DNA of 58,066 nt, filler included, from Sluysia triapertura (GCA_046118255.1; 4 parts of 4 records of this genome joined end to end with filler, not necessarily neighbours in it), one strand, 5' to 3'; counted from the whole stretch's first letter, positions 3,211-58,066 are shown. The notes: generated from the letters alone by a model not told the origin. Numbers and translations are program-made.

Positions 3211-4299
3211 TTAATAATTGTTTTGTTGTACCAGACAATCTTTATTTCTTTGAAATATTTCTCGAATGATTTGTAAAAAAATTGATCGAAATGTTTTATT
3301 CGATAGTACATAAATGAAAAAGTTGATAAAACTATCTATATAAATGCATGAATTTGCTACCAACAATAAAATTTGATCCACATCTTTCATTCGATGTTTT
3401 CGAAGGTAGTACTCAAGAATTTTTGAAAAGAACGATGGAGTTTCGAGTATAAAAAACGTACTACAAACCAAAAATATTAATCGATCACCTAGTAGGGGAT
3501 TACATTTTTTACGAGCAGTAGCATTCTTTTTACGAAATTGTTTCATTTTTCGAATAACTTGAACAACATAAAACGACAAAACGCAAACAATGATTATCGG
3601 TCCTCCGGATTGAAAAAGAAAACATATTATACCACGATGAACAATTCGATAAACCGAATTTTCGAGCAAAAGTGATGAATTTCGACTAATAATCCAAAAT
3701 TTTGAATTGTAACAAAGAAAATAATTCCATTCGAAAAGACGAGGAATTGTCATACATATTGATACAGTTAAAATTAAAAATTCCCATTTGTATATTGTGT
3801 GTTTTCGAATATGCTTCATGGCACCAACTGGCAAACAAACTGACTCATAACGATGTACAGCCAATAAAATTATATTCCAATTTCGACTAATTAAAAGTGC
3901 AGACATCATAGCACTTAATATAAGCTGTGATTCGATTAATAAAATGGCAGCTGCAAATGTGAATACTTGTCGGTGTGGAATTATCGATTCCATCGATAAA
4001 CGATCGTGAAGTGATTTTAAAAATACAGTTGCATTAAAAACAGCTTCACAAACAGTAAAACATTTAAAAATAATACTCATTGGTGAATTACGCCATGATC
4101 GATGACGATAAACGATTTGTGCGACAATATTTAAAATAATATTCGAAAATGATAAAATAATCGTTGTATAATTGTAAATATTGAATATTCTGTTCGCAAT
4201 TTCAGTTTGTTTCATTTGGGAATCCGAATAATTAGTTTGGTTTCGAATTACTGACGAATTGGTATGTGTAATTGAACAATTCCAATAATTAATCAACAT
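3211..4299 (-). CDS. Intronless rhodopsin-class (class A) GPCR, FMRFamide/sex-peptide-receptor-like or Srw-like, about 362 aa
   Basis: ATG at 4299 in GCCGCCATG context; N-terminal N-glycosylation sequons (NCS, NSS, NQT, NYS); seven hydrophobic segments; LLAVHRYESVCLP (DRY region), IPRLFE after TM4, FFILETP (TM6), INFFIY (NPxxY position), FR helix 8. Confidence 0.92.
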   Translation of the reverse strand: MLINYWNCSITHTNSSVIRNQTNYSDSQMKQTEIANRIFNIYNYTTIILSFSNIILNIVAQIVYRHRSWRNSPMSIIFKCFTVCEAVFNATVFLKSLHDRLSMESIIPHRQVFTFAAAILLIESQLILSAMMSALLISRNWNIILLAVHRYESVCLPVGAMKHIRKHTIYKWEFLILTVSICMTIPRLFEWNYFLCYNSKFWIISRNSSLLLENSVYRIVHRGIICFLFQSGGPIIIVCVLSFYVVQVIRKMKQFRKKNATARKKCNPLLGDRLIFLVCSTFFILETPSFFSKILEYYLRKHRMKDVDQILLLVANSCIYIDSFINFFIYVLSNKTFRSIFLQIIREIFQRNKDCLVQQNNY

Positions 4300-5959
4300 G
4301 GCGGCCAAATGGCTATAAGTAATATAGTTAGTAAATGATGTCTATTAAAATATAATTATAATAAAATTATGATTATAATTATTAAAAATTGTTATAATTA
4401 TCAAATTATAATTTTATTATAAAATTACTAATCTATCTTTAAAACATTTTTCTGCTTCTGATCTACGTTAAACACTAAAAAAATTAAATAATGAATTAAA
4501 ATTCAATTTTAATTATAAAACAATGAATTGAAAATATTACGAAGAATTAAAATAACAAAAAAATCTAATTATAAATTCTAATTTTAATTCTATTGTTGAA
4601 AACAATATTTTTTAATTTTGATTTATAATATTTAATGTAAGATCAATATTTGTAGATAAAGAAATTCAAAGACTGAGAGATGAAATCATTAAATAAATAT
4701 TAATTTAATTACATAAATTGGATTAATAATAATTAAATTATAAAATTAATGTAGAAATTTAATTAATAATAAAATATAATATAAAAGTTATGAAACTTGT
4801 GTTATATTAATTATAAATAATATTAATAGTGCTCAGTTTTTCTTACTTAGTCTTACGAATAAGGTAGAAGATTTTCTTATGGTGAGTTCACCAACGTATT
4901 AGACTTACCAATTAGGGTTAGCATTGGATTTTCAAGTCAAATAAAATTATAAAATTTAATATGGAGATTACTTATCAGGCTTTGTCTAAAAATTTATGAC
5001 ATTATTAAAGGTTAATCTTAATAGTTATTAAATGTGATTTTACGAAAATCCTATGAAAAGGATTCGTATTAAGTGTATCAGAATGAAATTCGGACAAAAC
5101 ATATATAATTTATTATTTTAAAACTATGTAATTTACTAAATGTATCTTTTTACAAAAATCAAAATTAAGCAAAAGATGATTATATATTGCAATAAGGACA
5201 ATTATTACAGAAAAAACGATTACAATATGCATATGAATGATTTTTCGTAATTAACTATTATAAGTTAATCTAATTTAATAATTTTTAAGATAATATTTTA
5301 CGATAGAACCGTGAAAGGGTTCTATATATAATTCAAAAGTAATTTAAGTCTACATTACGATAGATACGTAAAAGTATTTGTACCTTATAAAAATAAACTA
5401 ATGTTGGAAGCAAAGAAAATCTTGATTAGTTTTGGCTCTTTACTGTGATTAATAAATTTTGGTTAACGAATTTTGGTTGTTAACTTTTGCTAGTCAAATT
5501 TTGATTGTGAAGAACAAATTTTTCGTAAAACAACTTTAGTTTATCTAAAACAAATTTTTGCTTGTGTGATTTGTACAAAATTTTTTCCATATATATAGTG
5601 ATTTTGTTTGTCCTTGAACGATATTTAAACAATAGTATTTATTTTACAAATCAATTTAATTTACAAATTAGTCAATATTTTACAAATTAACAATTTACAA
5701 ATTAATAATTAATAAAATACTTACATTTTAATATTTAATTCAATATTTTTTTCAAATTAAATCCAAATTATAATATAAACAGAATAATATTTTTAATAAA
5801 CAGAATTAAAAATCAATAAAGTATTATAATAGTAACAAAATATGTGTGTATCAAATGTTGATGTCTATTATTATTATTAACAATAGAATTAATACTTGAA
5901 AATCAATAAAAATAATAATAAAAATGATAATAATAATAATAAATATTGTTGCATATGTA

Positions 5960-43321: not shown

Positions 43322-43398
43322 AGTGGTAGAGCATTCGAACTGCGCAGCGATGGTCCCGGGTTCGATCTCCGGTCAGTCCATTTTATGAAGTCTAACAT
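43322..43398 (+). ncRNA. tRNA-Ala-derived element / short SINE (5' end lost in the gap)
   Basis: AGTGGTAGAGC...GGTCCCGGGTTCGATCTCCGGTCAGTCCA plus the tail TTTTATGAAGTCTAACAT shared with the copy at 48444. Confidence 0.75.
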
Positions 43399-43539
43399 AA
43401 GCATTCATAAATTTCTTAGAATAAGAATGCTATAAAAGGTAGCTTGTTGAGCAAACATTATTAATCATGAGAAAATATAAAAGATTTATTTAATTAAACA
43501 TTTGAAATTTAATTTATTGCAAAAAATTAATTATCTAAC

Positions 43540-46500
43540 TTGTCTAATAGATGTACCAATACAATCAACTCCTGTATCTCCTCCACCAATAATAATAACA
43601 TCTTTATCTTTTGCATAAACTGACAAATAATCTTCATTTATTCCATCTGCTTGATGGCGTTGCCATTTTTCTAAGAAACTCATTGCAAAATGAATTCCTT
43701 CAGCATCTCGACCTAATTATATATTAATTTTATAATAAATTGTATAATACTCTTAAAATATAAGCAAAACAAATATCAAATAATGTAATTTTTAAAAAAT
43801 CCTAAAATATTTTGAAATCAACATGTAAATAAATGAAAATAAATGCAAAATGCAAGATTGCGCATTAGCACTTTTCCAACTTAATTAGCAAATAAGCAGG
43901 AGTACGGATCAAACAGAAACATCAAAAAGAAGCGAAAAAGGAGATTAATAAGAACAAACTAAAACATACTAACAAACTGCAAAATTGATGAATATGAATA
44001 TATAATATATAGAAATATAATGATTATATATGAAATTAAATTTGAACTTAATAAAATATATTGAAATTCGAATTGAATTTTACGCATTCGTTTCAAAAAA
44101 TGATCGATGTACTCAAATTAAATGCGATTTTAAATTCTATGGTATGTTGAAAAATGATGAAATTAAATGTTATTAATGGTTCTAGACATCGAAATTTAGC
44201 TTTTGTGATGATTATAGCTTTTTTATTGATACGGTGATAATAAAATTCCATATAATAATAAAATTTTATGTTTACAATAATAAAATAATAATATTTTAAT
44301 GTAAAAAGCAATAAATAATTTTGTACAATAATAAAATTAATAAAAATAATGTTTTAATATAAGAAGACGAAACAACATATGAAGCATTTAGTAAAATTAG
44401 AATTCGACTTTATCTTAATTCCTTGTCAGATAAAAACAGCATTAACAAATCGGTAAAATCCAGATCGAATTAGTTTCCAATCGAATTAGTTGGCTCAGTT
44501 ATTTCATAGATCCTTTTCAAAATACGATCGTTGTAACACAATCCAATTGGACTTTTATCAAAATTTTTCCACATCAATTAGTAAGTTTAATTTTTATAAG
44601 TTTCTCTTCCTTTAAGGGAAGGAATAAAATCCAGATAAAATATATTAAATTTTTCTACTAGTTTAAAGCTAGTGTTAAACTTATAATTAAATTAAATAGA
44701 TTAAATTGGATTAAAAACCTAATACTTTAATATTTCATTTTCGATATAATATTAATTTGTTCATATACATTGATATTTTCTGATTACGTGTAATTTCTCT
44801 TACGACTTCTTAATGTATTTCCCAGCTAATTTATTGTTAGCTTTAATATATTTATTTGTGTTCTTTATATCTTTTTATTAATTGCATTAAAGTATTGGAG
44901 TAATAGACTGGTGGATTTTAATTTGTTGATCATTTGTATAAATTATAAATTCTAAACCAGGTATATTCAAATCCCGTGGCCATGTAGACCCAACAGCTAG
45001 CAGGACGGCATCATATTCGCTTATCAATTTTTGAGTCGGCCATTCATCACTTCCAACATTAGCATTTGTCACAAATCGAATTCCTTCCTGTTCCATTAAA
45101 TTTACGCGCCTTTGTACGACGTCTTTGTCCATTTTCATAGTTGGAATTCCATAACGTAATAAACCACCAATACGATCTTTTCTTTCTAACACCGTTACAG
45201 TGTGACCAGCCTAAATTATAAATAAAACGTAAAATAAAATGTCTAATCCAAGTAAACAATTAAACAATCAATTTTAATCCAAGATCCATTAATCACCACA
45301 CAAATATCAAACTCAAAATTGAAAAAGTAGCTTTCTTAATTCCTCGTACAAAATGAACATATTCAATAATTACAAAATCACATTTATTAGTAATCATCAA
45401 ATAACATTCCACACATCTTGTAAAACTTTTGTGATTATTTTTATTGGTCTTAATATCTGCTTTAAAATAAATAGCTAAAAAGTTTTAAATAAATGTTGTA
45501 ACTTGATGTTCTGAATTAACGCTTATTGTCAAGAAATATTTTGAAGAAATACAGAAATACTTATTTTCTAAAGATATTGTTGTCTTTTAATACTATTATT
45601 TTCCAAATTATTAAATTAGAACTCCATAACTAAATAAATTCATAATCTCGATTATATTCTTTACAGGATCACAAAATTACAACTAAAAGATATAAATTAT
45701 TCTTTATAAAATTGTAAATTATTCTTTAAAGACAAATCACAACCTATTTAAACTTTAGCACTCGTGTATTAACACAAAAGATATTCAATAATGAATACGT
45801 TACTAACCTTTACTCCTATTTTATACTAAACTATTTTATGTTACCTGATTGCTAAAAAAATAACTTCAGTTTCACTGTTATCTACAGATGAACTGAACTA
45901 GCGTCCCTTTAACTCGAAAGTTTTCTTCTGTTTCCTTAACTCTTGTCTTTATCGTTTTTCACTTCTGTTTTTCTTGCAGAAATGTAACTGTTTATATAGC
46001 AGTTTTATGATAATTAGAGAAACAATCCCCTTATCCTTTGGATATTATCTAATTAAAATTTAAAATCATTATTACACTATTATTACATTAATAACGTAAT
46101 TTTACAACTTAATTTAACAAAAAAATTAATGAAATTTCTCACAGGAGTCTTTGATGCGTTTTGCGTTCAACAGCATATTTGAATTAGTCTCTTCATAACC
46201 ATCAATTTGATAAATACTTTATTAATACTTAGACATCGGAACATATTTAATTTTAATTTTAAAATATAAAAATTAATTAAAATAACTAATTTGTACGTTA
46301 TCTACGTTGACGTGCTTCGCAATACTTCATCATTAAAAACACTAATAAAACTAAATATTATACACTAAATCCAATATCATTTTATGAGCAAACATCTTTT
46401 TTGAGTTACAAAATTAAACAAATTTTAATTAAGTTAATTAACAAATGTACTTTAATATTTTAACAAATAAAATTTTGTAAAGGGTTATTTTTCATTATTT

Positions 46501-49500
46501 TGTTTTAATTTAAGTATTTTATATACTTATCTTACCATTACAGTTAATCGTAATACCTTAACTTAATTCTTTAATAATTTTCAATTTATTCTGTTATCCT
46601 GAATCCTGACCCCTTACATCTACCTTAATATTATAATCCGGTGGAACGAAATGCCTACAAGTGTTTTACTAAATATGTGGTAAGTTTTCTTTGAGTTTTT
46701 ATTAAATGAATTTATTTGTCAATGTTAACAATTAAGTATTCATTGAAACAATTATTGTACAATAATTTTAAAAAATAAATAAGTTTAAATTGTACCTTGT
46801 TAAGTTGGGCAGCTGAAGCAAGACCAGATGGTCCACTTCCTACTACAACTACCTTTTTACCAGTCCTGATTTCCGGAGGAGACGGTTGCATCCATCCTTG
46901 TTCAAAAGCATTGTCTATAATAGCACATTCGATATTTTTTATAGTAACTGCAGGAGTATTAATACCAAGTACGCAAGCACCTTCACAAGGAGCGGGACAA
47001 CAACGACCTGTAAATTCAGGAAAATTGTTTGTTTGTAGTAGCTGATATAAAGCCTTTTTCCATTCATTCTAATATTAGTATTAATAATTATTTAATTAAA
47101 TTACTTTGTATATAAAGTCATTCCAACGTGGGATAATATTACCTAAGGGACAACCATTACTCGATTGACAAAACGGAACTCCACATTCCATACATCGAGC
47201 TGCTTGTTTACGAAGACTTTTACGAACTCCTTTATGGTCATATATTTCATTCCAGTCATTAATTCGTTCTTCAACAGGTCTATAGGGTTTTGGATTACGA
47301 GAATATTTTTGAAAACCTCTAATCTTATCCAGATTTTCATCTTCAACCATATTTTCAATATCTTTCATCAGTTCAATTTTCTTAAATAACAAAAATTTGT
47401 AATTTTAATTAAATATAATTAAATTACAATTATTTACAAAAAATCATTTACTGACATACATAAGTAACTAAACTATTTTTAATTAATTTTCAAAAATTAT
47501 TAAATCTAGTAATTTATAAGCTGTTTTTATACTTTAAATGTTGACATCATTTTTACTAAAATGACAGCTTGAAGCGCTTGCCTCATAAATTTAAATTTTC
47601 GTAGTATAATTTTGTTAGCATCAATGAGATATTATCGGAAGATTTTAACACGTTGAATGCCATGGGGACCACTGGTGACCTCAGTGAATTATATGCGTCA
47701 CGAATGATTACAAAAATTAAATGTTAAAATTAAATTAATTAAATATTTCATCAAAATACGCAACACATACTGAGAAAAATTTCATCTTGACCAGAGGGGC
47801 ATGCGGTGGCCAACCTAATTACTTAAAATTTTAATTTAATTCATAATAAAAAATCACATTTTACTAATATTCCACCTTTATTTCTTCAAAAAGTATTAAA
47901 AAGTGTAAATATATTAAAATATTTTAAGTTCATAATTTGATAACATTAAAATCATTCCTAACATCGAAAATCATTAAATTTAGATTTCAAATTTACTTCA
48001 AAATAATAAATTAAATGGAATTTCTTTTTAACACCTTAACTACGATATTACTCTTTCTAGATATTCCTTCATGAATCTTCTACATTTTATTTTACACTTC
48101 AAGAAGAAGAAAAAGAACTATTTCAGATAATATATTAAGAATTTAAGGAATATCTAAAAAGATAATAAGACTTTATGCATTTTAGTTATGTCATTCATTA
48201 TTATTATTATTATTTATTCTGTTCATATTTTAAAAGAATTTTTATCAAAGAAAGAAGAGAAATTAAGTTTTAAAAGAAATTTATGCCTTTTTTTGTTTTT
48301 ATTCTTTTATTACTCATTATTATTTATATTTATATTATTATCATTATATTATTATTAGTATTATTATTTTTATTACTTTTGAGGTAAAAGGCTTAAAGTG
48401 CCATTTTTTAAAAATTGACTACATTAAATTAAATTGTTAGATGGGGCTGATAGCTCAGTGGTAGAGCAATCGAACTGCTCAGCGATGGTCCCGGGTTCGA
48501 TCCCCGATCAGTCCATTTTATGAAGTCTAACATTACTACTACTATTAGCGACACCAATAACTTTTCCAGACAGCGACAGTCTCTTATCAAATGACAGATT
48601 TCTAATTGTTTTGAGCTGGCAACTAAAATTTTATTCTTATTGGCCATCCAATGGCATTCATTTTTTAACATAAAACAATTACAATTATTTTTGGCAACAT
48701 AATTATTACATTAATTTATTCACGTAATTTGCATGGTAACAAACATTTGTAGTTTTTAGTCGATAGATTAGATATCAATTAATATTGTTAGATAAATAAA
48801 TAAACTCTGCATTAATAGTTCGATTTTAAAAGATTTTTGGAGTTTATCTTATAATAGTATTGGTGATAAAGATTGAAATGTTCTGCTTATAGTAATATCG
48901 ATAATAAAATATTGAGACTTCGACCTTATATTATCATACTTTATTAAATAACACATTTTAAATGAATAATCAAGATTTTAAAACAGAACCAGAACTATTA
49001 ATGAAATCATGCAAAAATTACGTTCCGGAAGAATGGATTAAATTAGTTATTAATGATTGTAATGTACACGATCGTAAAAAGGCTAAAGAGACATTTAAAC
49101 TTTCAGATTTAGGTAAAGACATTATGTTCAATTTAGTTGATACCGAAATATTATATAAAATGAAATTTTATCCGTACAACGAACATCTTTATTCTACTTA
49201 TTTAATGAATATTATTATGAACGGAAGATTTGATGATACAGGGAGGTATCTCAAACAAGTCAAGATTAGTGACATCAAAAATGTAGAATGTGTTAAAGTA
49301 AATTCTATTACTCGACCTATTGATGTTTCATCCAACATAATATCAAATAATCATCTGAAATGCGAATTTTATTAAAACCACAACGGAACCGCAATATGTT
49401 TGTTTGGTACAACCAATTTAGATATATGCCTCAGATATGACCGTTTACGTCAATATGCTCACAATGTACCAGAATTCCCTCAATGACGCCAACTTTAATA

Positions 49501-52500
49501 TCAACTTGGATCGAATTACAAATTAATTCAATCAATTCAAATTCTACAATCAATAACAACGTGATTGGTGTTAAGCATAACGGACATCCAGCTATACTGA
49601 ATGACAATTCTGAATTAAAATTAAATTATGCTTTTACGGAAATTAAAATGTATGATTATATTTTCTATTTTTTATTAAGATTAATCTGTCAAACAACTTG
49701 TGGTATTCCAAAATGTAAATCGTCAGCCAATTTTAGTTATCAAAATAACATTTTATAACTTTTCAATTAATTCAATTTATGTTATAATTAATAGATTTTT
49801 AGGATCTTATTTAGTAATTGTAATAAATAAACATTTTGGTCATTATTTTGCAAAATTTTATCTATTTGAATTAATTAATTTTGATAAAATTAATTATAAA
49901 ACAATTGCATTTAATTTAAAGACATTTCTTAATACCCCAAAGGGCAAGCCATGTAAAATTAGCGTGGCACTCAACGTGTTAATGTTGACTCAATTTTATG
50001 TTCTATCTCTATAAATTTTGTTAAATTCAGTAATGACTTAGAATTAAAATTGTTAACATGTTTTCAAAGTATCCCATTAAAGAGTCATTAATATTTAAAA
50101 TTATTTTCATATACTTAAAAGATGGACTTAAGTAAAATTCATATCGTTGAAATTTTTATTAATAATATTATTTTTTGTGTTTTTATATTAAATTAATAAA
50201 TTTAATTAACAAATTTTTAAAATTAATTATATTAATAAACTTTTTCATTTGTTAAATAACATTTATTTAAATATAACACATTAAATTAATTAGTTTTTAC
50301 AAAACGTCACCTTAAACTTAGACATTTTAGGTATGCACAATGAGCACTATGTGCACATTTATAATAATCCAAGTTGTATATATTTTAGTTAAGTGTGGGA
50401 AATAATTTATAATTTCGATTGGTTCATTTAGTAACTCGTTAAGAGTATAAGATTTTCTACTTCCAAACCATAATAATCAAAGGTTATTTATCATTAAACA
50501 TTAGTTAATTTTCGCTCAAACAATGTATTTGATAACCAATCGTTAGCGAACATAAATTTCGTTAATTAAATACCCGAGATCGTATACCAGTTAGTCCATT
50601 TTGGGATCGCTATTGTTATTAATGATTTTTGATTATTGTTTTAGTGATGTTAATGTAATTGACGATACTGAATTAATTAAAGTGTGCTATAATGATTGAC
50701 ATTGTTTATAATGGGCGAATGGAAATGTATCAAGGAAATGTTAATAGAAGCAGTCAAATCGAGTCAAAATTTATGATATTTTAAAAATATTTTCATTGTT
50801 AGGGCATTTATTATAATAAAATATTTGAATTTCGTTTATAGTTTGATTTGAGATGTTCAAAATTGTGTAAATTTATGTTTATTCTCAATCGTTTTATCTT
50901 GAAATTACATTTTAAATACATCGACTTCAAAACACGTAAAATTTTTGAGATATTTTAACATCGAACCGAGAACGCTATCTCTTTCCCAAATCTAATAAAA
51001 CAGTCACATAAATATTTTGTCTTCCATATTATTAAAACATTAATTTCAAAGTTTGATGCACACCAATTCATACAATCACCGGTCATTTGACCGGTACCTA
51101 TATGTAAAATTAAACATATAGTCATATATAAAATTCAAAGGCATACTATATAAAATGTTGAAAAATACAATTTCATAATATTTTTTAAATTAAAAACTGA
51201 AAACGATCATTTAACCGGTCGTTAAAGAAAAATTAAGTAAAAAATTAAGAAAAATAAAACGGCTTCAAAAATTAACGAGACGAAAAAATAAAGAAACTAA
51301 AAAGAGATAATTGTAAAAATTTCGGGAAAAGAGCACTAAAAATTATATCGAGATGAAAAAAACTTAATTCAGATACTATAAAGCAAACAAATACAAAGTT
51401 GATAAACAAGAATAATGACTACAAGTTTGATGATGCATACGCTATCCAGGAACAAGATACAGGTGACGATTGGAAATGAGGAAATACGAATTCTGTAAAA
51501 AAAACCGAAACGCGATTGAAGACGAAAACAACTTGCAATATTAATTGCGAGATGAATTATGTGAAGATTATACCAGTGTTCTTGTTAAGCTTTAATGAAC
51601 GTGAAAAAACACAATAATTCTGACTCAGTTATACATTAATTTGTTAAATCTTGTTTTTATGTCTATATTCTATATAATTTTTCAGAGTATTATCTGTCTT
51701 TTGGGGGGTAATTTATCATTCAATGGAATTTACATTATGACACCTTTCAATCCTAGATAAAATTGGAAATGATAATTACATTTGAATCAAAGTATGGATC
51801 TAATTTCATTAATGGTACAGTCAACAACCTTTTACAATAGAATAAAGACCCAACAAATGAAATAGTGCATTATATCAAACATGCATTGTGTTATAATCCT
51901 TAACTTTAATTTAATATCTTTTCACAATCATCTTCTGACGAAACAGACATGTGTGTTCTCAATAGTGTTCATACTTGCCTTTATACTATCGCTCGCACTT
52001 CTATAAACTCATTTTCTTTCGAATTACTTCCAGTTCTACATAAGTTCAGTAAAAATAAAACACTTAACATACAGAACTTAAACTTCAAAAATACACCAAA
52101 ACATAGATTTGACAAGTCTTTCCAAATTCCCAATCTTCTAAAAAAGATTAATTAATAATTTCCTTCATATTTTTCAATAAACACATCTCATTTTAAAATA
52201 ACATTTTTGTAACATTACATTCCCTTGTATTATCATCAACTTAATTCTTGGTATAATAACATATGAAAATAATTTTTAATGAGTAATATGTCAAAGCTAT
52301 GTTTTGTGATTAAATATGATATTCGGAATTATTTCATCGCAAGGATTCAATCTACATATATGTTTTTGTTTGTGTCTGTGATACGTAATTCCTTATTAAT
52401 TAAAATAATTTCTTGTATTAATTTAAATCACTCGACTTGAATGTTTCTATTAATATTTTATAAGTTATTTTACAAAATGGATTTTAATTAAGTTAATTAA

Positions 52501-55500
52501 CAAATTACTTTTACACATTTTATTAAGGTTTTCATAGCCTTTTCATATGCTATCAAAAAATACTACCATCATTGTTGTTCGCGATTTATCCGTTAATCAT
52601 ATTTATTACAATTATTATCATTATTATTTCCATTATTAATAATAATATCAATAATTACAATAACTGTAATACAAATTTTATTATTACTTTTACAGTAATT
52701 TCTTATAATTATTATTTAATTTTTAATTTAATTTTAGATTCAGACCTGATAGATTATTTCTTTTGATTTATTAACATAACGTGAATGTATTTGTAATCAA
52801 ATATTTTTACATACTCTAACATTAATAACTATGTTTGGATATAATCATTAGATCATCAATATCAATCCTCTGACCGAGGACCCGATGGCCTATCAGCTAA
52901 AGTATTTTTCCACTTGTAAATCGCGAATTTTTGCATTGTGAAGTTTGCATTAAGCGCATATAATTGGATATTTTTTTGTTGTAATAATCCTAACATCTGT
53001 TCTAATTTTCACAGGATTCCAATTTGTAAAGTAGCATAGATGGTTTACTTTAATTTTAATTCTTGAGGATCATTCTCAAAAGATTTGTTCCATTTAAATT
53101 TCTGATAGACTTTGCCCAATCGGAGCAGAATTTCTCTAATAGCGAATCCTACTACATCGAATTGTTTGTACTTTTTCTGGAAATGGTTCACTGCACCTCT
53201 TTAGATTGCGTGTCAAAACATTTTTGCTTGGACTCACATATGATAGCATCGCAGAACAGTTATTGATGATGATCCTACGAATCTAATACTAGAAGTTTTA
53301 TAAAAGGGCAAGCTACACCATAAAATGCTTAATTTTAAAATTGATGATAGTAATTGAGGATAAAGAGGCTCGTAACTTCTCTGAATTAGATGTATGCAGA
53401 ATACATATAATGATGGTAGTTTAAAAATACTAATTATGGACATGAAAATGGGAAAGCAGACAAAATATTGTTGAACAATGACACTCGTTGTTTGTTGTTC
53501 AGTGATATAAAGAATATTGTTTCTAAGATTCAGATAAATGAGTAATGTGTCAAAATGGTGTAATCAGCGACTCATAGTACCAGCTAATAAAGATGAAGCG
53601 AAACCGGAACTGGATAAATTATTAATTGATGATAGTGGAAATAAAATATTGTGTACGGTGTTGATTTCGGATAGGTGAAGATAGAAGTGTTTCGTTTATT
53701 ATCCCTTCAAAAAGTGACATCAAAGTATGGTGATGCTAAGTTATTTTCTTTGCTTGACATAAAGAAAGACATCTTAATAAACCTAATTAGTAGAAAAAGT
53801 TATTTGTTGTTCTGCCTTAACATTTAGTACAGAACTACATTTTTATTTTATTCTAATTTTGTCACAGTAATTTTAATGTAATATATAAATAACAAAAAAT
53901 TCAAAATTAACTTGTTGAACTGGTTCAGCTTTATTTTGATGAAGTTTTTCATTTTTTGCTTGACGCAAAATCTTTCTATATTCTTTAGGAAATACTTTAA
54001 CAAATTTAGACATCGAATCCCGCCAGTTATTCAATATATCTTCACCAATCTGTAATAAAACATAAATAAAATAATATCATCTACATAAACATACCGTTGA
54101 TTCAGTATAGTTAGTAAATTCTAATAAAGTTTCTTTGAGAAAATTTTCATCGATACTGTCGTTTTTGATAGGTTCTAAATCAACAAAATCCATGTTGCAT
54201 ACGCGAGAAAAGTTGTCAGCATTATTTCGGCTATAAACATAGGCAATTCCACCTGACATTCCTGCTGCAAAATTACGACCAGTTGGCCCCAAAATTATTA
54301 CACGTCCTCCTGTCATGTATTCGCAACCATGATCGCCAACACCTTGTTAATAATAAAAAAAATAAAATGAAAAATAGAAATAGAAATAGAGAACCGGAAA
54401 TTAAAAAATAGATTGACAAAATTTAATCCAAATTATATGACCAAACACGAATTTTATTTAAAATCCTAAAAAGAAACATAAGATCAATTCGGAAGAATTA
54501 CACACTGAAAAATGTGTAAAATTAATTGTTGTTTTTGTGCAAGATAAAAATTATCAAATTATAATTATTTAATAAAGAAACTAAGTCACAAACGGGCACA
54601 AGGCCTTAGCATTTGATAAAGTACTTTCTTATGTGTATCTAAGCCTTTTATATTAATTGACTGAACGGTTTTAAAGTGATTGTAAATAATTTAAAAGAAA
54701 TGTGAAAAATCTCTTAAAATATTAAAACGTATTATAGCAAGCTTAAAGCTTTTAAAATATCTAAAATTTAGAAGTCTTTCGCTATTCTGATTGGCTATCC
54801 AATACATTATGAAAAAAAAGAAAAATAAGTCATAAAATTTATCAACAAAAAGTGCAAAGATAGATTACTTGATTCATTAAATCTGTCTCCAATAAACTGA
54901 AATGCATAATTCTATTCGCAAACTTTCCATCGTTCTTTAGAAGCATTACTCTAATTTTTTGAAAATCTAAGAGCAAGCAGCATCAACCTTTCAATCAAAA
55001 TCGATCCAAGATCCAATGACATCTTCATTAAATCTATATTTCCTTTTTGTGTTATTTAAAATCTAAAATACAGATGTTTCTTGTCACTTTAAGATTTGAA
55101 ATATCTTTTATAACATTTATATCGATTGCACGATTGATATTTGTCCTTCAACAATTCACGGTTTTCGAATATTGGATTTTAAAATACGAAATTTAGTTAT
55201 TTCTAAATAAATTTGGCTAATTATTTGTGTCAATCCAAATAAATTTAAATTCAACTGCAATAAGAATAAATAAATGATTCGAATAATTTCAAAATTAAAA
55301 TTATCACTCTATAAATTTTGAACATAACCAATTTGATATTGATTGGAATGTTTCGGTAGAGAAATGATTTGATTTAACATTGAAAATGAATATTTTAACT
55401 TTGTAATGTATATTTTTATCATCAATTCATTAATAATTTTTTGATCCATTTGGATATGTTTTTTAGTACTTCATTTTCTTTCAAATATCACCATATCTCC

Positions 55501-57139
55501 ATTCTACTGTAACAAAGTCAATATTAAAACAACAAAAAAGATTAAAAGTGAAAATAAAAATTAACAATAAAATAAATTTTAATAATAAAATAGTAATAAT
55601 AGAAATATTTAATTGTTGCACTTAGTAAAATATTGGACATTAAATGTAAAGATGAAATGATAAATGATGGGATGAATTAATAATTTTTGTGTGCACATTG
55701 AAAAGACGTGTTTGATGTAATTAATTACGGTTTTAAATCACCATATGTACGTGAAAATAATTCCAACCTTCAACAACTGCAATAGCACCAGAATTTCTGA
55801 CACAAAATCTTTCTGCTGCCATGCCTCTCAAATAAACTTTACCACTTGTAGCACCATAGAGACAAACATTGCCAACTAAAATATTTTCTTCTGATTTAAA
55901 CGACGGATGTGACTTTTTAGGTGGTACAATTACCACTGTACCTCCAGATAAACCTTTTGCAACATAATCATTTGAATCTCCTTCAAGATGTACAGTTACA
56001 CCACCAACTAAGAAAGCACAGAAGCTCTGTCCGCCACTACCGGTTAGATTTATCTAAATGATTATATCATACATTCAGATATGATAAGCTTTTCAAAATA
56101 CGTTTGAAAAATATGATCAAACACTACTTATACTTAGGAAAAACAATTATCCCTAGGATCCTAATTATAACCAAATGTAACTACTCAGTTATAATGTACC
56201 AAAATTCTAATTGGCTATTTCTTCTTTTCCATTGAACATTATGCATTTTTTGGCTCCTTTCTACATCAGCTTTTATTACTAATAAGATGAATCAATGTCA
56301 TCCTCATCGGATATAAAATGCAGACATCATCATCATCATCATGTACTTCATCAATTACAATAACATATTGCAAGAAATTTTAACAACACTAACTGGAAAT
56401 GTCAAATATTAAATATCTCTATATTAAACTTGTTTTTAAATAAACTAAATTCTAATTGGCTATCTAATAATAATTCAGACAAACTTGATAATTCAAGTAA
56501 ATTTGAATTTATTGATAAATCCTGTAGCAGGTTTATTTAGCCTAAGCTATAACATATCACTTCACCTTTTGAAATATCAAACATTAAACTCATTAAGACT
56601 ATAATATAATATTACGACCAATAAAATCAAAAACAAATGTAATGTCAGTTGAATATTATTGACTTTGTACTTTAGCAGTAATTATGCAAATTTCACTGTT
56701 TTCGAGACACTATATAAAACATGAAAATAGGTAATTTATTCTACATAATATAAAAGCATTTTCACGTTCGAATATTCAAATATATTTGGGATTTATTTGA
56801 TATTCGTTATAATTATAATTATTAAATACTTACTTTAATGGATTTATGACTTGGCAACGAATTAGCTCCATAATGTTTTGAAATTGTGTAACTAAGTGTA
56901 GCTCCGAATGTACGATCACTATTTTTTATAACATCTTCAATTTCTATGCTAGAATTATCTTCAAATATTACTGATTTGGCTTTTTCAATTATACGATAAT
57001 CCATTCGTTTTTCGGTATTAAATTTTTGTGCCAATACTCCACCATGGCTAATTATATTTGGATGATCTTTAGATGGATTATATAGCATACGATCGAAATT
57101 AAGCAAAGCTGCTTTTGGATTAATGAAATCAGTTGATTG
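43540..57139 (-). CDS. GLT1: NADH-dependent glutamate synthase (fused GltB+GltD type), 8 exons: 57139-56834, 56053-55768, 54342-54095, 54049-53912, 47380-47105, 47068-46796, 45210-44958, 43712-43540
   Basis: Motifs [135 protein letters not shown]. All splice sites are GT-AG and phase-compatible. The 5' exons lie beyond the window and the 3' exons are missing at the spacer. Confidence 0.97.
46150..46620 (+). repeat. Dispersed repeat family B, copy 3 (intronic)
   Basis: Colinear match to 30040-30460 and 35600-36050. Confidence 0.8.
48444..48545 (+). ncRNA. tRNA-Ala-like element / tRNA-derived SINE
   Basis: 72-nt body 48444-48515: acceptor GGGCTGA/TCAGTCC with A73, D arm GCTC-AGTGGTA-GAGC, T arm with GTTCGATCC (Pol III A and B boxes). 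The anticodon arm is not canonical. Followed by TTTT, a shared 18-nt tail and (CTA)n. Confidence 0.78.
48962..49758 (+). pseudogene. Unknown-family cargo ORF inside the piggyBac-like element (one in-frame stop, one frameshift)
   Basis: A 137-aa ORF continues past TAA 49373-49375 as [35 protein letters not shown], then shifts into the 49483-49758 frame. No piggyBac DDD transposase motifs are visible. Confidence 0.55.
52890..53230 (-). mobile_element. Degenerate Ty3/gypsy RT-RNase H remnant (intronic)
   Basis: [53 protein letters not shown] (cf. FKW....AF..LK, LAYFD......TDAS, PIAYASRKL..AE.RYSQIEKE). Confidence 0.7.
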
Positions 57140-58066
57140 CTATAATTAGAAATTTACATAAAATTAAGCACTTAATTATCGTCAATAACTACCAAAAAAA
57201 TATTTATATTTAAAATCATAATTCGTAATATTTAATTCAAAAATAAAAACGATTAAAATTAACCTATTATCTTCAAAATTTTTTCTTTTAATAACTAAAT
57301 AACTTCTAAATATGAAATATTAAAATATTAAAAAAATAGTATATCATTATGCATTTAATTTAATTTTTTTGTATTTTTGGGTTAATCCATGCTTGCTGAT
57401 TAATAAACTTGAAAACAAATAAAATGCATTGCTTTTCCATTTACATTATCGATATATTACATGTGCATTCTGACGCACAGTATTGATTTATCAGTTATTC
57501 CAGAAGAAATTATTTCAATACTTCAATTTAAAATTTCAAACACCTTGGATAGAACAGAGTCGACATAGCAAAGGAGAAGAAAATGATTATTGTAGTGATG
57601 ATGATATATCATTATCATTTCCGTTGGATATGCTTGAAATATTTCCGTAAGAAGATTTTGAAATAACTTCTTAAATGAACACTCTTAATTTAACTTAAAA
57701 TAAATTATAATTATAATTATAATTATAATTATTGTTACATTGAATTAAAAATTTATATAAAAATTATATTGATGTATAATATGTATTATATTTATATGAA
57801 AAGTGCTTACTATACACAACAAAAATTCCGGAATAAATTAATGCCAATTCTAATTTCTTGGTGCATGGATTTGAAAGAATGAATTGAAAACACTCATTAT
57901 TGCTATTTTTGAATGATATGTGGGATTAAAATATTTCAAAATTAAGAAATAAAAATTATTTGATTATGAAATGCACTTTTATTAAGGCATAAAATTATTA
58001 AGGCATAAAACGATCAAGATAACAATAGTGAGTCTTAATAATTCATAAGCTTCAAAGACGCAACAA

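What the first reader, a model, noticed from the sequence alone, without database searches (positions are those of the whole stretch)
47645..49982. TTAA-flanked piggyBac-like element carrying a non-transposase cargo gene and a tRNA-like RNA, inside a glutamate synthase intron
Seen: a 2330-bp unit bounded by TTAA on both sides and 14-bp TIRs with one mismatch. It encloses a roughly 260-codon disrupted ORF (48962-49758) with no piggyBac transposase motifs, a candidate 30-nt GT-AG mini-intron (49650-49679) and a tRNA-Ala-like element. Known: TTAA TSDs with C-starting TIRs are piggyBac hallmarks; gene capture is well described for Pack-MULEs, Helitrons and the piggyBac-associated Teratorn, but less so for small piggyBac derivatives. 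Inference: a Pack-type piggyBac vehicle that moves a lineage-specific gene.
Basis: partly seen in the sequence, partly recalled or inferred. Interest (0 to 1): 0.75.

Follow-up and report, generated by a model that had tools for sequence, protein, structure and literature searches.

The report
Decayed non-autonomous piggyBac-type transposon in an intron
A 2.3-kb transposon of the piggyBac kind, with no transposase of its own, sits in an intron of a glutamate synthase gene; it holds a copy of a very abundant tRNA-derived repeat and a broken copy of a repeated orphan reading frame, which makes it an ordinary genomic parasite and not yet a shown gene-carrying vehicle.

Summary
TTAA+CACGTTGAATGCCA (47645-47662) and its inverted partner with one mismatch (49965-49982) bound a 2330-bp unit. 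It lies in a roughly 6.5-kb intron of a minus-strand glutamate synthase gene.

The piggyBac assignment is supported.
- The same 14-bp end plus TTAA occurs in many animal-associated metagenome contigs.
- In at least seven of those loci it sits beside or encloses piggyBac transposase (Pfam DDE_Tnp_1_7) sequence.
- In the source organism's contigs the element's ends are repeated on the order of 100-300 times, and short MITE forms join the left end directly to the right end.

The "cargo" reading is not established.
- The tRNA-like piece is a copy of an extremely abundant SINE-like repeat. A second copy lies 5 kb away, and its anticodon loop is aberrant.
- The ORF is more than chance and not a transposase. 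It has no relative among 1.84 billion proteins, is broken by a stop and a frameshift, and occurs in dozens of diverged copies.
- Whether the ORF travels between these ends elsewhere rests on two weak hints.
- The 30-nt mini-intron has no support.

Verdict: new member of a known kind, of modest interest.

The parts
47645..47648 (.). Left TTAA (target-site duplication)
   Evidence: Read directly; part of the 18-nt match.
47649..47662 (+). Left terminal inverted repeat CACGTTGAATGCCA
   Evidence: 2 matches against 0.03 expected; the repeat ends after 14 nt. The same end occurs in 73 metagenome loci.
47649..48136 (+). Left arm, repeated on the order of 200-300 times in the source organism's contigs. 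Short MITE forms use only about 47649-47797.
   Evidence: summed contig depth is 3961-5678 against about 17 for single-copy exons, with 45-91 distinct contigs at variant sites. Joints run 47777->49942 (5 contigs), 47765->49942, 47715->49944 and 47667->49950.
48137..48395 (.). AT-rich low-complexity stretch with (ATT)n/(TTA)n runs
   Evidence: 48197-48214, 48299-48375. The reads tool skipped 48189-48381 as repeats.
48396..48533 (+). Copy of a very abundant tRNA-derived SINE-like repeat. The tRNA-like core is 48444-48515, with A-box-like TAGCTCAGTGG, B-box-like GGTTCGATCCC and a TTTT run right after it.
   Evidence: Rfam tRNA scores 46.3 bits but with a 10-nt anticodon loop. ARAGORN gives an odd call. 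Depth is 3-4e5, with at least 126 contigs. A second copy at 43322-43398 is 95% identical, with the shared 3' end at ...TCTAACAT. The 5' limit is approximate, taken from the loose-end consensus.
48534..48961 (.). Spacer, single-copy or nearly so
   Evidence: depth is 112-142, within the range of the unique AT-rich intron flanks (17-216).
48962..49372 (+). ORF piece A, 137 codons, ending at TAA 49373-49375
   Evidence: No Pfam or NCBIfam match. No word-search relatives. Only a spurious hit among 1.84e9 proteins. Depth is 500-760, with 12-40 distinct contigs.
49376..49483 (+). ORF piece B, 36 codons in the same frame as A, after the stop
49441..49755 (+). ORF piece C, 105 codons in a different frame (frameshift within 49441-49483)
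   Evidence: No relatives found.
49650..49679 (+). Claimed 30-nt GT-AG mini-intron: unsupported
   Evidence: The frame is open through it and 30 is a multiple of 3. No RNA run was available.
49870..49964 (-). Right subterminal arm. Its inner limit is approximate; short MITE forms keep only 49942-49978.
   Evidence: bin 49807-49973 has depth 3403, and joints land at 49942-49950. It is about 85% identical to the end of a 242-bp MITE in L014.
49965..49978 (-). Right terminal inverted repeat (CACGTTGAGTGCCA on the minus strand)
49979..49982 (.). Right TTAA
   Evidence: The unique flanking contig of run X1 starts at 49979 (record 8).
47096..47386 (-). Host glutamate synthase exon downstream of the intron (Fer4_20 region)
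53911..54051 (-). Host glutamate synthase exon upstream of the intron
   Evidence: it translates as ...[32 protein letters not shown]..., followed by GT.

Best explanation
This is one non-autonomous element of the piggyBac superfamily, 2330 bp long, inserted at a TTAA in an intron of glutamate synthase. It can move only if a piggyBac-type transposase made elsewhere binds its 14-bp ends and subterminal sequence, cuts it out and pastes it into another TTAA.

Its family has on the order of a hundred or more copies in this genome. Most are shorter, and some are roughly 180-bp MITEs that join the left 130-150 bp to the right 37 bp.

This copy is a long, decayed member. Its interior holds AT-rich simple repeats, a copy of an unrelated and extremely abundant tRNA-derived SINE-like repeat, and a broken copy of a dozens-copy orphan reading frame that is not a transposase.

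Shown: the ends, the TTAA flanks, the superfamily link, the repeat status of each part, and the absence of a transposase and of any relatives for the ORF. Inferred: that the 2.3 kb is one unit, that the SINE-like piece arrived by nested insertion, and that the ORF belongs to the longer form of this family and is now non-functional.
For: - Ends: a TIR pair plus TTAA on both sides, with 0.03 expected by chance.
- Spread: the same 18-nt end occurs in 73 metagenome loci.
- Complete TIR pairs: 96 bp apart (L025), 242 bp (one locus seen four times: L014/L068/L069/L070), 510 bp (L024), 1686 bp (L026/L052) and 2212 bp (L042). The two partner ends that did not match the search pattern are still followed by TTAA.
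- Transposase link: DDE_Tnp_1_7 lies just inside such ends in L008 (E 5e-62) and L048 (E 3.5e-35). Transposase remnants lie between the TIR pairs of L042 and L026/L052, and also in L041, L010, L031 and L045.
- Source-organism contigs: the left arm has depth 4000-5700 and the right arm about 3400, against about 17 for exons. Several joints link about 47777 to 49942, which are short forms carrying both ends.
- SINE-like piece: depth 3-4e5, with a second copy at 43322-43398.
- ORF: longer than in 99.75% of shuffles. It gives no Pfam or NCBIfam match, one noise-level PDB match and nothing in viral contigs. It has no word-search relatives and only one spurious hit in the HMMER search. No transposase similarity exists in the whole piece.
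- Hints that the ORF sits in other family members: a joint 48023->49094, and a paralogous contig (record 7) running from the ORF's 3' end, 49687, to 49875, where the high-copy right arm begins.
- One unit, not two: with about 10^2-10^3 copies in several hundred Mb, two independent partial copies lying 2.3 kb apart in the correct mutual orientation would be rare (inference).
Against: - TTAA on both sides cannot prove one unit, because every piggyBac insertion has it.
- No empty site was seen (with only part of the joints listed).
- Depth summed over short contigs at 80% likeness is not a copy number, and the unique AT-rich flanks vary from 17 to 216.
- The spacer 48534-48961 looks single-copy, so this exact composite is not shown to exist elsewhere.
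- The right flank 49979-50307 has about the same depth as the ORF (about 650), so moderate repetition is common here.
- No autonomous partner with these ends was seen in this organism. The transposase link comes from other organisms' contigs.
- The tip is CAC, not the usual CC[C/T]T.
Confidence: 0.6

Rival explanations
1. Pack-type vehicle. The element captured a host or lineage-specific gene, or a fragment of one, and spread it, so the dozens of ORF copies all lie between these TIRs at different TTAA sites.
For: - The ORF is more than chance, and G is enriched at codon position 1.
- It is not a transposase.
- It is present in dozens of diverged contigs (12-40 contigs per variant site).
- Two hints place it next to family arms in other copies (joint 48023->49094; record 7 ending at 49875).
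- piggyBac elements are known to carry host DNA. Pokey carries rDNA spacer repeats (PMC3849761).
Against: - No parent gene or any relative exists among 1.84e9 representative proteins or in the word searches.
- This copy has a stop and a frameshift.
- The 14 best-supported differences from the other copies fall 3/7/4 on codon positions 1/2/3 (my count, table 3), so no sign of selection.
- The ORF is 6-10 times rarer than the arms.
- Co-occurrence was not directly shown.
Confidence: 0.2
2. Two separate elements. The left and right ends belong to two independent, truncated insertions of the same family, and the DNA between them (SINE, spacer, ORF repeat) is ordinary intron sequence or another transposon.
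For: - TTAA flanks are uninformative for piggyBac.
- After the left 150 bp there is a weak resemblance to the right-end sequence (GGGCATGCGGTGG at 47797-47809 against GGGCAAGCCATG at 49943-49954, followed by a TTAA at 47823).
- Pokey MITEs often insert next to each other (PMC3849761).
- The spacer looks single-copy.
Against: - Depth stays at the family level through 48136, so most copies continue past 47800 as this one does.
- Alignment finds no credible right end near the left end, and no left end near the right end.
- The two ends have the correct mutual orientation.
- Proximity by chance is improbable at this copy density.
Confidence: 0.08
3. The ORF is a remnant of a recognisable gene class that sequence searches miss. 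It could be a PrimPol-like (archaeo-eukaryotic primase) C-terminal part, or an internally deleted and very divergent piggyBac transposase (N-terminal region joined to a cysteine-rich tail).
For: - A PDB search aligns ORF residues 9-97 to human PrimPol 260-344. Matches fall at D..V[Y/H].R...K.S..GK and N.RF.DT.R.L.
- Further on there is C-x5-H (across the stop) and CSQC about 30 residues later, loosely like a CHCC zinc finger (read; inference).
- The ORF ends about 220 bp from the right TIR, where a transposase C-terminus would lie.
Against: - The PrimPol E-value is 0.57, no better than unrelated hits in the same list.
- Pfam finds nothing even at E<=10.
- The ESM Atlas gives no usable hit.
- The AlphaFold model has pLDDT 32, so no fold comparison is possible.
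- No DDE_Tnp_1_7 signal and no tblastn similarity to the clade's transposases.
Confidence: 0.1

Closest known systems
Non-autonomous piggyBac-superfamily elements and their MITEs (e.g. Daphnia mPok/Pokey, coral CMITEs, human MER85)
   Same: - TTAA duplication and short TIRs of 12-19 bp.
- No transposase, multi-copy, with short deletion derivatives.
- Frequent location in introns (PMC3849761; PMC2872659).
   Different: - The tip is CAC, not CC[C/T]T.
- This copy is 2.3 kb.
- It holds a non-transposase ORF and a nested SINE-like repeat.
piggyBat (Myotis lucifugus)
   Same: An active piggyBac-superfamily element whose tips read TTAA|CACT... (oligo table of PMC13405395; PMC11707139). A CAC start is therefore within the superfamily's range.
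   Different: - piggyBat is autonomous, and only the first three bases of the tip are shared.
- No relation between the transposases was tested.
Pack-MULEs / transduplicating DNA transposons; Teratorn (piggyBac fused to a herpesvirus)
   Different: - Pack-MULE cargo has identifiable parent genes, and here none is detectable.
- Teratorn is about 180 kb with a full viral gene set, whereas this element has one broken orphan ORF in 2.3 kb.
tRNA-derived SINEs
   Same: - A tRNA-like head with A and B boxes.
- Very high copy number and dispersed copies.
   Different: - Other copies also share about 30 nt upstream of the tRNA-like head (loose-end consensus).
- A TTTT run follows the head directly.
- Neither a 3' tail nor target duplications were determined.

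Membership tests
piggyBac superfamily (non-autonomous member) | TTAA target-site duplication | tested here: met
   TTAA lies on both sides. In related elements, the two partner ends that were not selected by the search pattern are also followed by TTAA (L014 group, L024). A TA duplication with an A...T tip cannot be formally excluded from this one copy.
piggyBac superfamily (non-autonomous member) | Short terminal inverted repeats (about 12-19 bp) | tested here: met
   14 bp with 1 mismatch.
piggyBac superfamily (non-autonomous member) | Terminal CC[C/T]T motif (PMC2872659) | tested here: not met
   The tip is CACG. piggyBat, an active member, also starts CACT, so the motif is usual but not universal.
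piggyBac superfamily (non-autonomous member) | The same ends are used by elements that encode a DDE_Tnp_1_7 transposase | tested here: met
   L008 and L048 carry the transposase. Remnants lie between the TIR pairs of L042 and L026/L052. All of these are in other organisms' contigs; an autonomous partner in this genome was not testable.
piggyBac superfamily (non-autonomous member) | Evidence of mobility: multiple copies at different sites, or an empty site | tested here: inconclusive
   Many contigs and high depth for both arms, plus short forms that join them. Related loci show different flanks. No empty site was seen for this insertion.
Pack-type (gene-capturing) DNA transposon | The cargo derives from an identifiable parent gene outside the element | tested here: not met
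   No relative in the word searches or in the HMMER search of 1.84e9 proteins, apart from one spurious hit. No Pfam or NCBIfam match and only a noise-level PDB match.
Pack-type (gene-capturing) DNA transposon | The same cargo lies between the same TIRs at several sites | tested here: inconclusive
   Only two hints from short contigs (joint 48023->49094; record 7 spanning 49687-49875). The full assembly was not available.
Pack-type (gene-capturing) DNA transposon | The cargo is intact or expressed | tested here: not met
   This copy has a stop at 49373 and a frameshift within 49441-49483. No RNA run holds it, which does not prove it is silent.
Functional tRNA gene | Cloverleaf with a 7-nt anticodon loop | tested here: not met
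   The Rfam alignment shows 10 nt in the loop. ARAGORN places the anticodon at an odd position. The second copy has the same loop.
tRNA-derived SINE | tRNA-like head with pol III boxes and very high dispersed copy number | tested here: met
   The boxes were read from the sequence.
tRNA-derived SINE | Defined 5' start at the tRNA head, a 3' tail and target-site duplications | tested here: inconclusive
   The 3' end is shared at 48533. Similarity continues about 30 nt upstream of 48426. No duplication was identified.

The most novel reading that the evidence does not exclude
A piggyBac-superfamily non-autonomous family has picked up a lineage-specific coding sequence, possibly a primase-polymerase-like fragment, and amplified it to dozens of copies. 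That would make it a 'Pack-piggyBac', a mode of gene or fragment amplification well known for MULEs and Helitrons but hardly documented for small piggyBac derivatives.
Probability: 0.15. Interest if true: 0.55.

Novelty: new member of a known kind. Interest (0 to 1): 0.3.

Why it matters
As it stands this is routine repeat annotation: a decayed non-autonomous piggyBac-type element in an intron, with a nested SINE-like repeat.

Two points have some value.
- The 14-bp end CACGTTGA(A/G)TGCCA plus TTAA is shared by transposase-bearing and MITE-sized elements in contigs from quite different animal-associated samples. That marks a widespread piggyBac lineage with a CAC tip and could serve as a handle for mining active members.
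- If a census of the assembly shows the orphan ORF always lying between these ends, it would be a clear case of sequence capture and amplification by a piggyBac derivative.

Tried and rejected
- **Generic inverted-repeat scan:** swamped by AT-rich matches and did not list the TIR. The pattern search did.
- **ORF identity:**
  - Pfam at E<=1 and E<=10 found nothing, nor did NCBIfam.
  - Word searches of pieces A and C found nothing.
  - HMMER over 1.84e9 proteins gave one hit, which is a 21-residue motif (GRFDDTG) repeated five times in a tandem-repeat protein. I rejected it as spurious.
  - The ESM Atlas gave no usable hit.
  - Viral contigs gave nothing.
  - The PDB gave only noise-level hits, among them PrimPol at E 0.57. 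I kept that as a lead only.
  - AlphaFold without an alignment gave pLDDT 32, so I did not run a fold search on it.
- **Joined read-through:** the ORF pieces were searched apart.
- **Transposase remnant in the element:** tblastn with two transposase pieces of this TIR clade found nothing.
- **Organism:** Run ids and organism names were coded.
- **Literature:** a full-text search for the TIR sequence found only unrelated primers.
- **Kolobok:** this is the other TTAA-duplicating superfamily I know of (from memory, not tested against its own transposase). I considered it as a rival and set it aside, because the ends co-occur with DDE_Tnp_1_7.
Full report
**What is there**

The piece (43322-58066) is very AT-rich, about 18-36% G+C per 500 bp. 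It carries a glutamate synthase gene on the minus strand. Exon ORFs match Pfam GXGXG (E 7e-17) and Fer4_20. A further exon at about 53911-54051 translates as ...[32 protein letters not shown]... and is followed by GT. The intron between it and the exon that starts at about 47386 is roughly 6.5 kb long and contains the finding.

TTAACACGTTGAATGCCA lies at 47645-47662, and its reverse complement with one mismatch lies at 49965-49982. These are the only two matches in the window even with three mismatches allowed, against 0.03 expected. Complementarity ends after 14 nt. The unit is 2330 bp.

**Superfamily**

A scan of public metagenome contigs for the 18-nt end gave 73 loci. Some are chance hits: high-GC, bacterial-looking contigs with no family-like continuation. 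Most, however, continue with related subterminal sequence, namely repeats of GTGCCA...CCCATGGG. They lie in contigs that carry animal genes such as Hairy/bHLH-Orange and arrestin.

Complete pairs of ends occur 96, 242, 510, 1686 and 2212 bp apart. In the two cases where the partner end differs from the search pattern, and so was not selected for it, it is still followed by TTAA.

The transposase link is direct:
- Just inside such ends, L008 and L048 encode piggyBac transposase (Pfam DDE_Tnp_1_7, E 5e-62 and 3.5e-35).
- Remnants of the same transposase lie between the TIR pairs of L042 and L026/L052.
- Further remnants occur in L041, L010, L031 and L045.

The usual piggyBac tip is CC[C/T]T (PMC2872659) and this one is CAC. 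The active bat element piggyBat also reads TTAA|CACT at its tips (PMC13405395; PMC11707139). I therefore accept the piggyBac assignment. The element itself has no transposase similarity, so it is non-autonomous.

A 242-bp MITE in contigs of a more GC-rich organism (L014 and three other samples of the same locus) has ends about 85% like ours.

**Repeat status in the source organism**

One run (X1) holds the stretch as short contigs; a second (X2) holds small parts of it. Contigs were laid at 80% likeness. Single-copy exons have depth of about 17, and unique AT-rich intron flanks range from 17 to 216.

| Region | Coordinates | Summed depth | Distinct contigs at variant sites |
|---|---|---|---|
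| Left arm | 47636-48136 | 3961-5678 | 45-91 |
| tRNA-like part | 48304-48637 | 3-4e5 | at least 126 |
| Spacer | 48638-48971 | 112-142 | not listed |
| ORF | 48972-49472 | 500-760 | 12-40 |
| Right end bin | 49807-49973 | 3403 | not listed |

Summed contig depth is not a copy number, so these figures give orders of magnitude only.

Several contigs join about 47777 to 49942, with 11-26 letters between the two sides. Those letters correspond to 47778-47797, which makes these contigs short MITE forms of about 180 bp that carry both ends. So the two ends here are the two ends of one family.

I read the short forms as deletion derivatives. The junction lies at a small shared motif: GGGCATGC at 47797 and GGGCAAGC at 49943. 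Depth stays at the family level up to 48136, so most copies continue past the junction as this copy does.

**One unit or two**

TTAA on both sides proves nothing for piggyBac, and I saw no empty site. I favour one unit for four reasons:
- The two ends have the correct mutual orientation.
- No nearer partner exists for either end.
- The left arm continues at the family's depth.
- Two independent partial copies 2.3 kb apart would be improbable at this copy density.

This remains an inference.

**The tRNA-like piece**

It scores 46 bits against Rfam tRNA, but with 10 nt in the anticodon loop. ARAGORN's call, Ser(cga) at position 28, is odd. It has A-box-like and B-box-like sequences and a TTTT run directly after the head.

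It is one copy of an extremely abundant dispersed repeat. A second copy, 95% identical, lies at 43322-43398 and shares the same 3' end. It is therefore a SINE-like repeat, most simply a nested insertion, and not specific cargo.

**The ORF**

The layout is 137 codons, a TAA stop, 36 more codons in the same frame, then 105 codons in another frame. This is more than chance: 137 codons is reached in 0.25% of block shuffles, and a second open stretch of 105 or more in 0.1%. G is enriched at codon position 1.

I found no relatives:
- Pfam and NCBIfam gave nothing.
- Both word searches gave nothing.
- Viral contigs gave nothing.
- The ESM Atlas gave no usable hit.
- The HMMER search of 1.84 billion representatives returned one hit, which is a short motif multiplied by a tandem repeat.

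The PDB search gave a noise-level alignment to human PrimPol residues 260-344 (E 0.57). Its pattern is suggestive to the eye, but it is statistically no better than unrelated hits in the same list, so I keep it as a lead only. AlphaFold without an alignment gave pLDDT 32, so no fold search was warranted.

The pieces were searched apart. The joined or read-through model was left out.

Among the best-supported differences between this copy and the majority of other copies, 3 fall on codon position 1, 7 on position 2 and 4 on position 3 (my count, table 3). This shows no sign of purifying selection on this copy. The claimed 30-nt intron is in frame and open, so nothing supports it.

**Does the ORF travel with the ends?**

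There are two hints:
- One contig joins 48023, in the left arm, to 49094, inside the ORF.
- One paralogous contig, 82% alike, runs from the ORF's 3' end at 49687 to 49875, about where the high-copy right arm begins.

These fit the ORF being part of a longer form of the family. They do not prove it, and the ORF could equally belong to another repeat nested here.

**Verdict**

The "Pack-type vehicle with gene and tRNA cargo" reading is not established. The tRNA part is a SINE-like repeat. The ORF is a broken copy of a repeated orphan with no parent gene, and its linkage to the ends needs an assembly-wide census. This is a new member of a known kind, of modest interest.

Noticed in passing
window 46300-46633: An even more abundant repeat than the SINE-like unit lies in the neighbouring intron: summed contig depth reaches 9e5, and 80-120 or more distinct contigs appear at variant sites. 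A short motif of it, TTTTAATTAAGTTAATTAACAAAT, recurs at about 52483-52506 (read).
   Followed up: no
window 43322-43398: A second copy of the tRNA-derived SINE-like repeat, 95% identical to 48457-48533 and cut by the edge of the piece.
   Followed up: partly
loci L001-L073 (e.g. L008:68-2058, L042:250-2461, L026:461-2146): The end TTAA+CACGTTGA(A/G)TGCCA is shared by transposase-bearing, mid-size and MITE-size piggyBac elements in contigs from several different animal-associated metagenomes. These elements have subterminal repeats of GTGCCA...CCCATGGG. This looks like a widespread piggyBac lineage with a CAC tip.
   Followed up: partly
window 49979-50307 and 50976-51300: The right flank of the element and a stretch 1 kb further on have moderately raised depth (about 650-980 against 17-40 nearby), so they may be further repeats. 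The second stretch contains palindromic ACCGGTCATTTGACCGGT-like motifs.
   Followed up: no
window 47621-47789: Run X2, coded as a different organism, holds a 172-bp contig identical to the left junction (flank plus element end). The insertion is therefore shared by a second sample or species (record 11).
   Followed up: no
window 49685-49981: A 99-codon open stretch, in the same frame as ORF pieces A and B, runs through the right arm into the TIR. A longest open stretch that long occurs in about 6% of shuffles, so it may be chance.
   Followed up: partly
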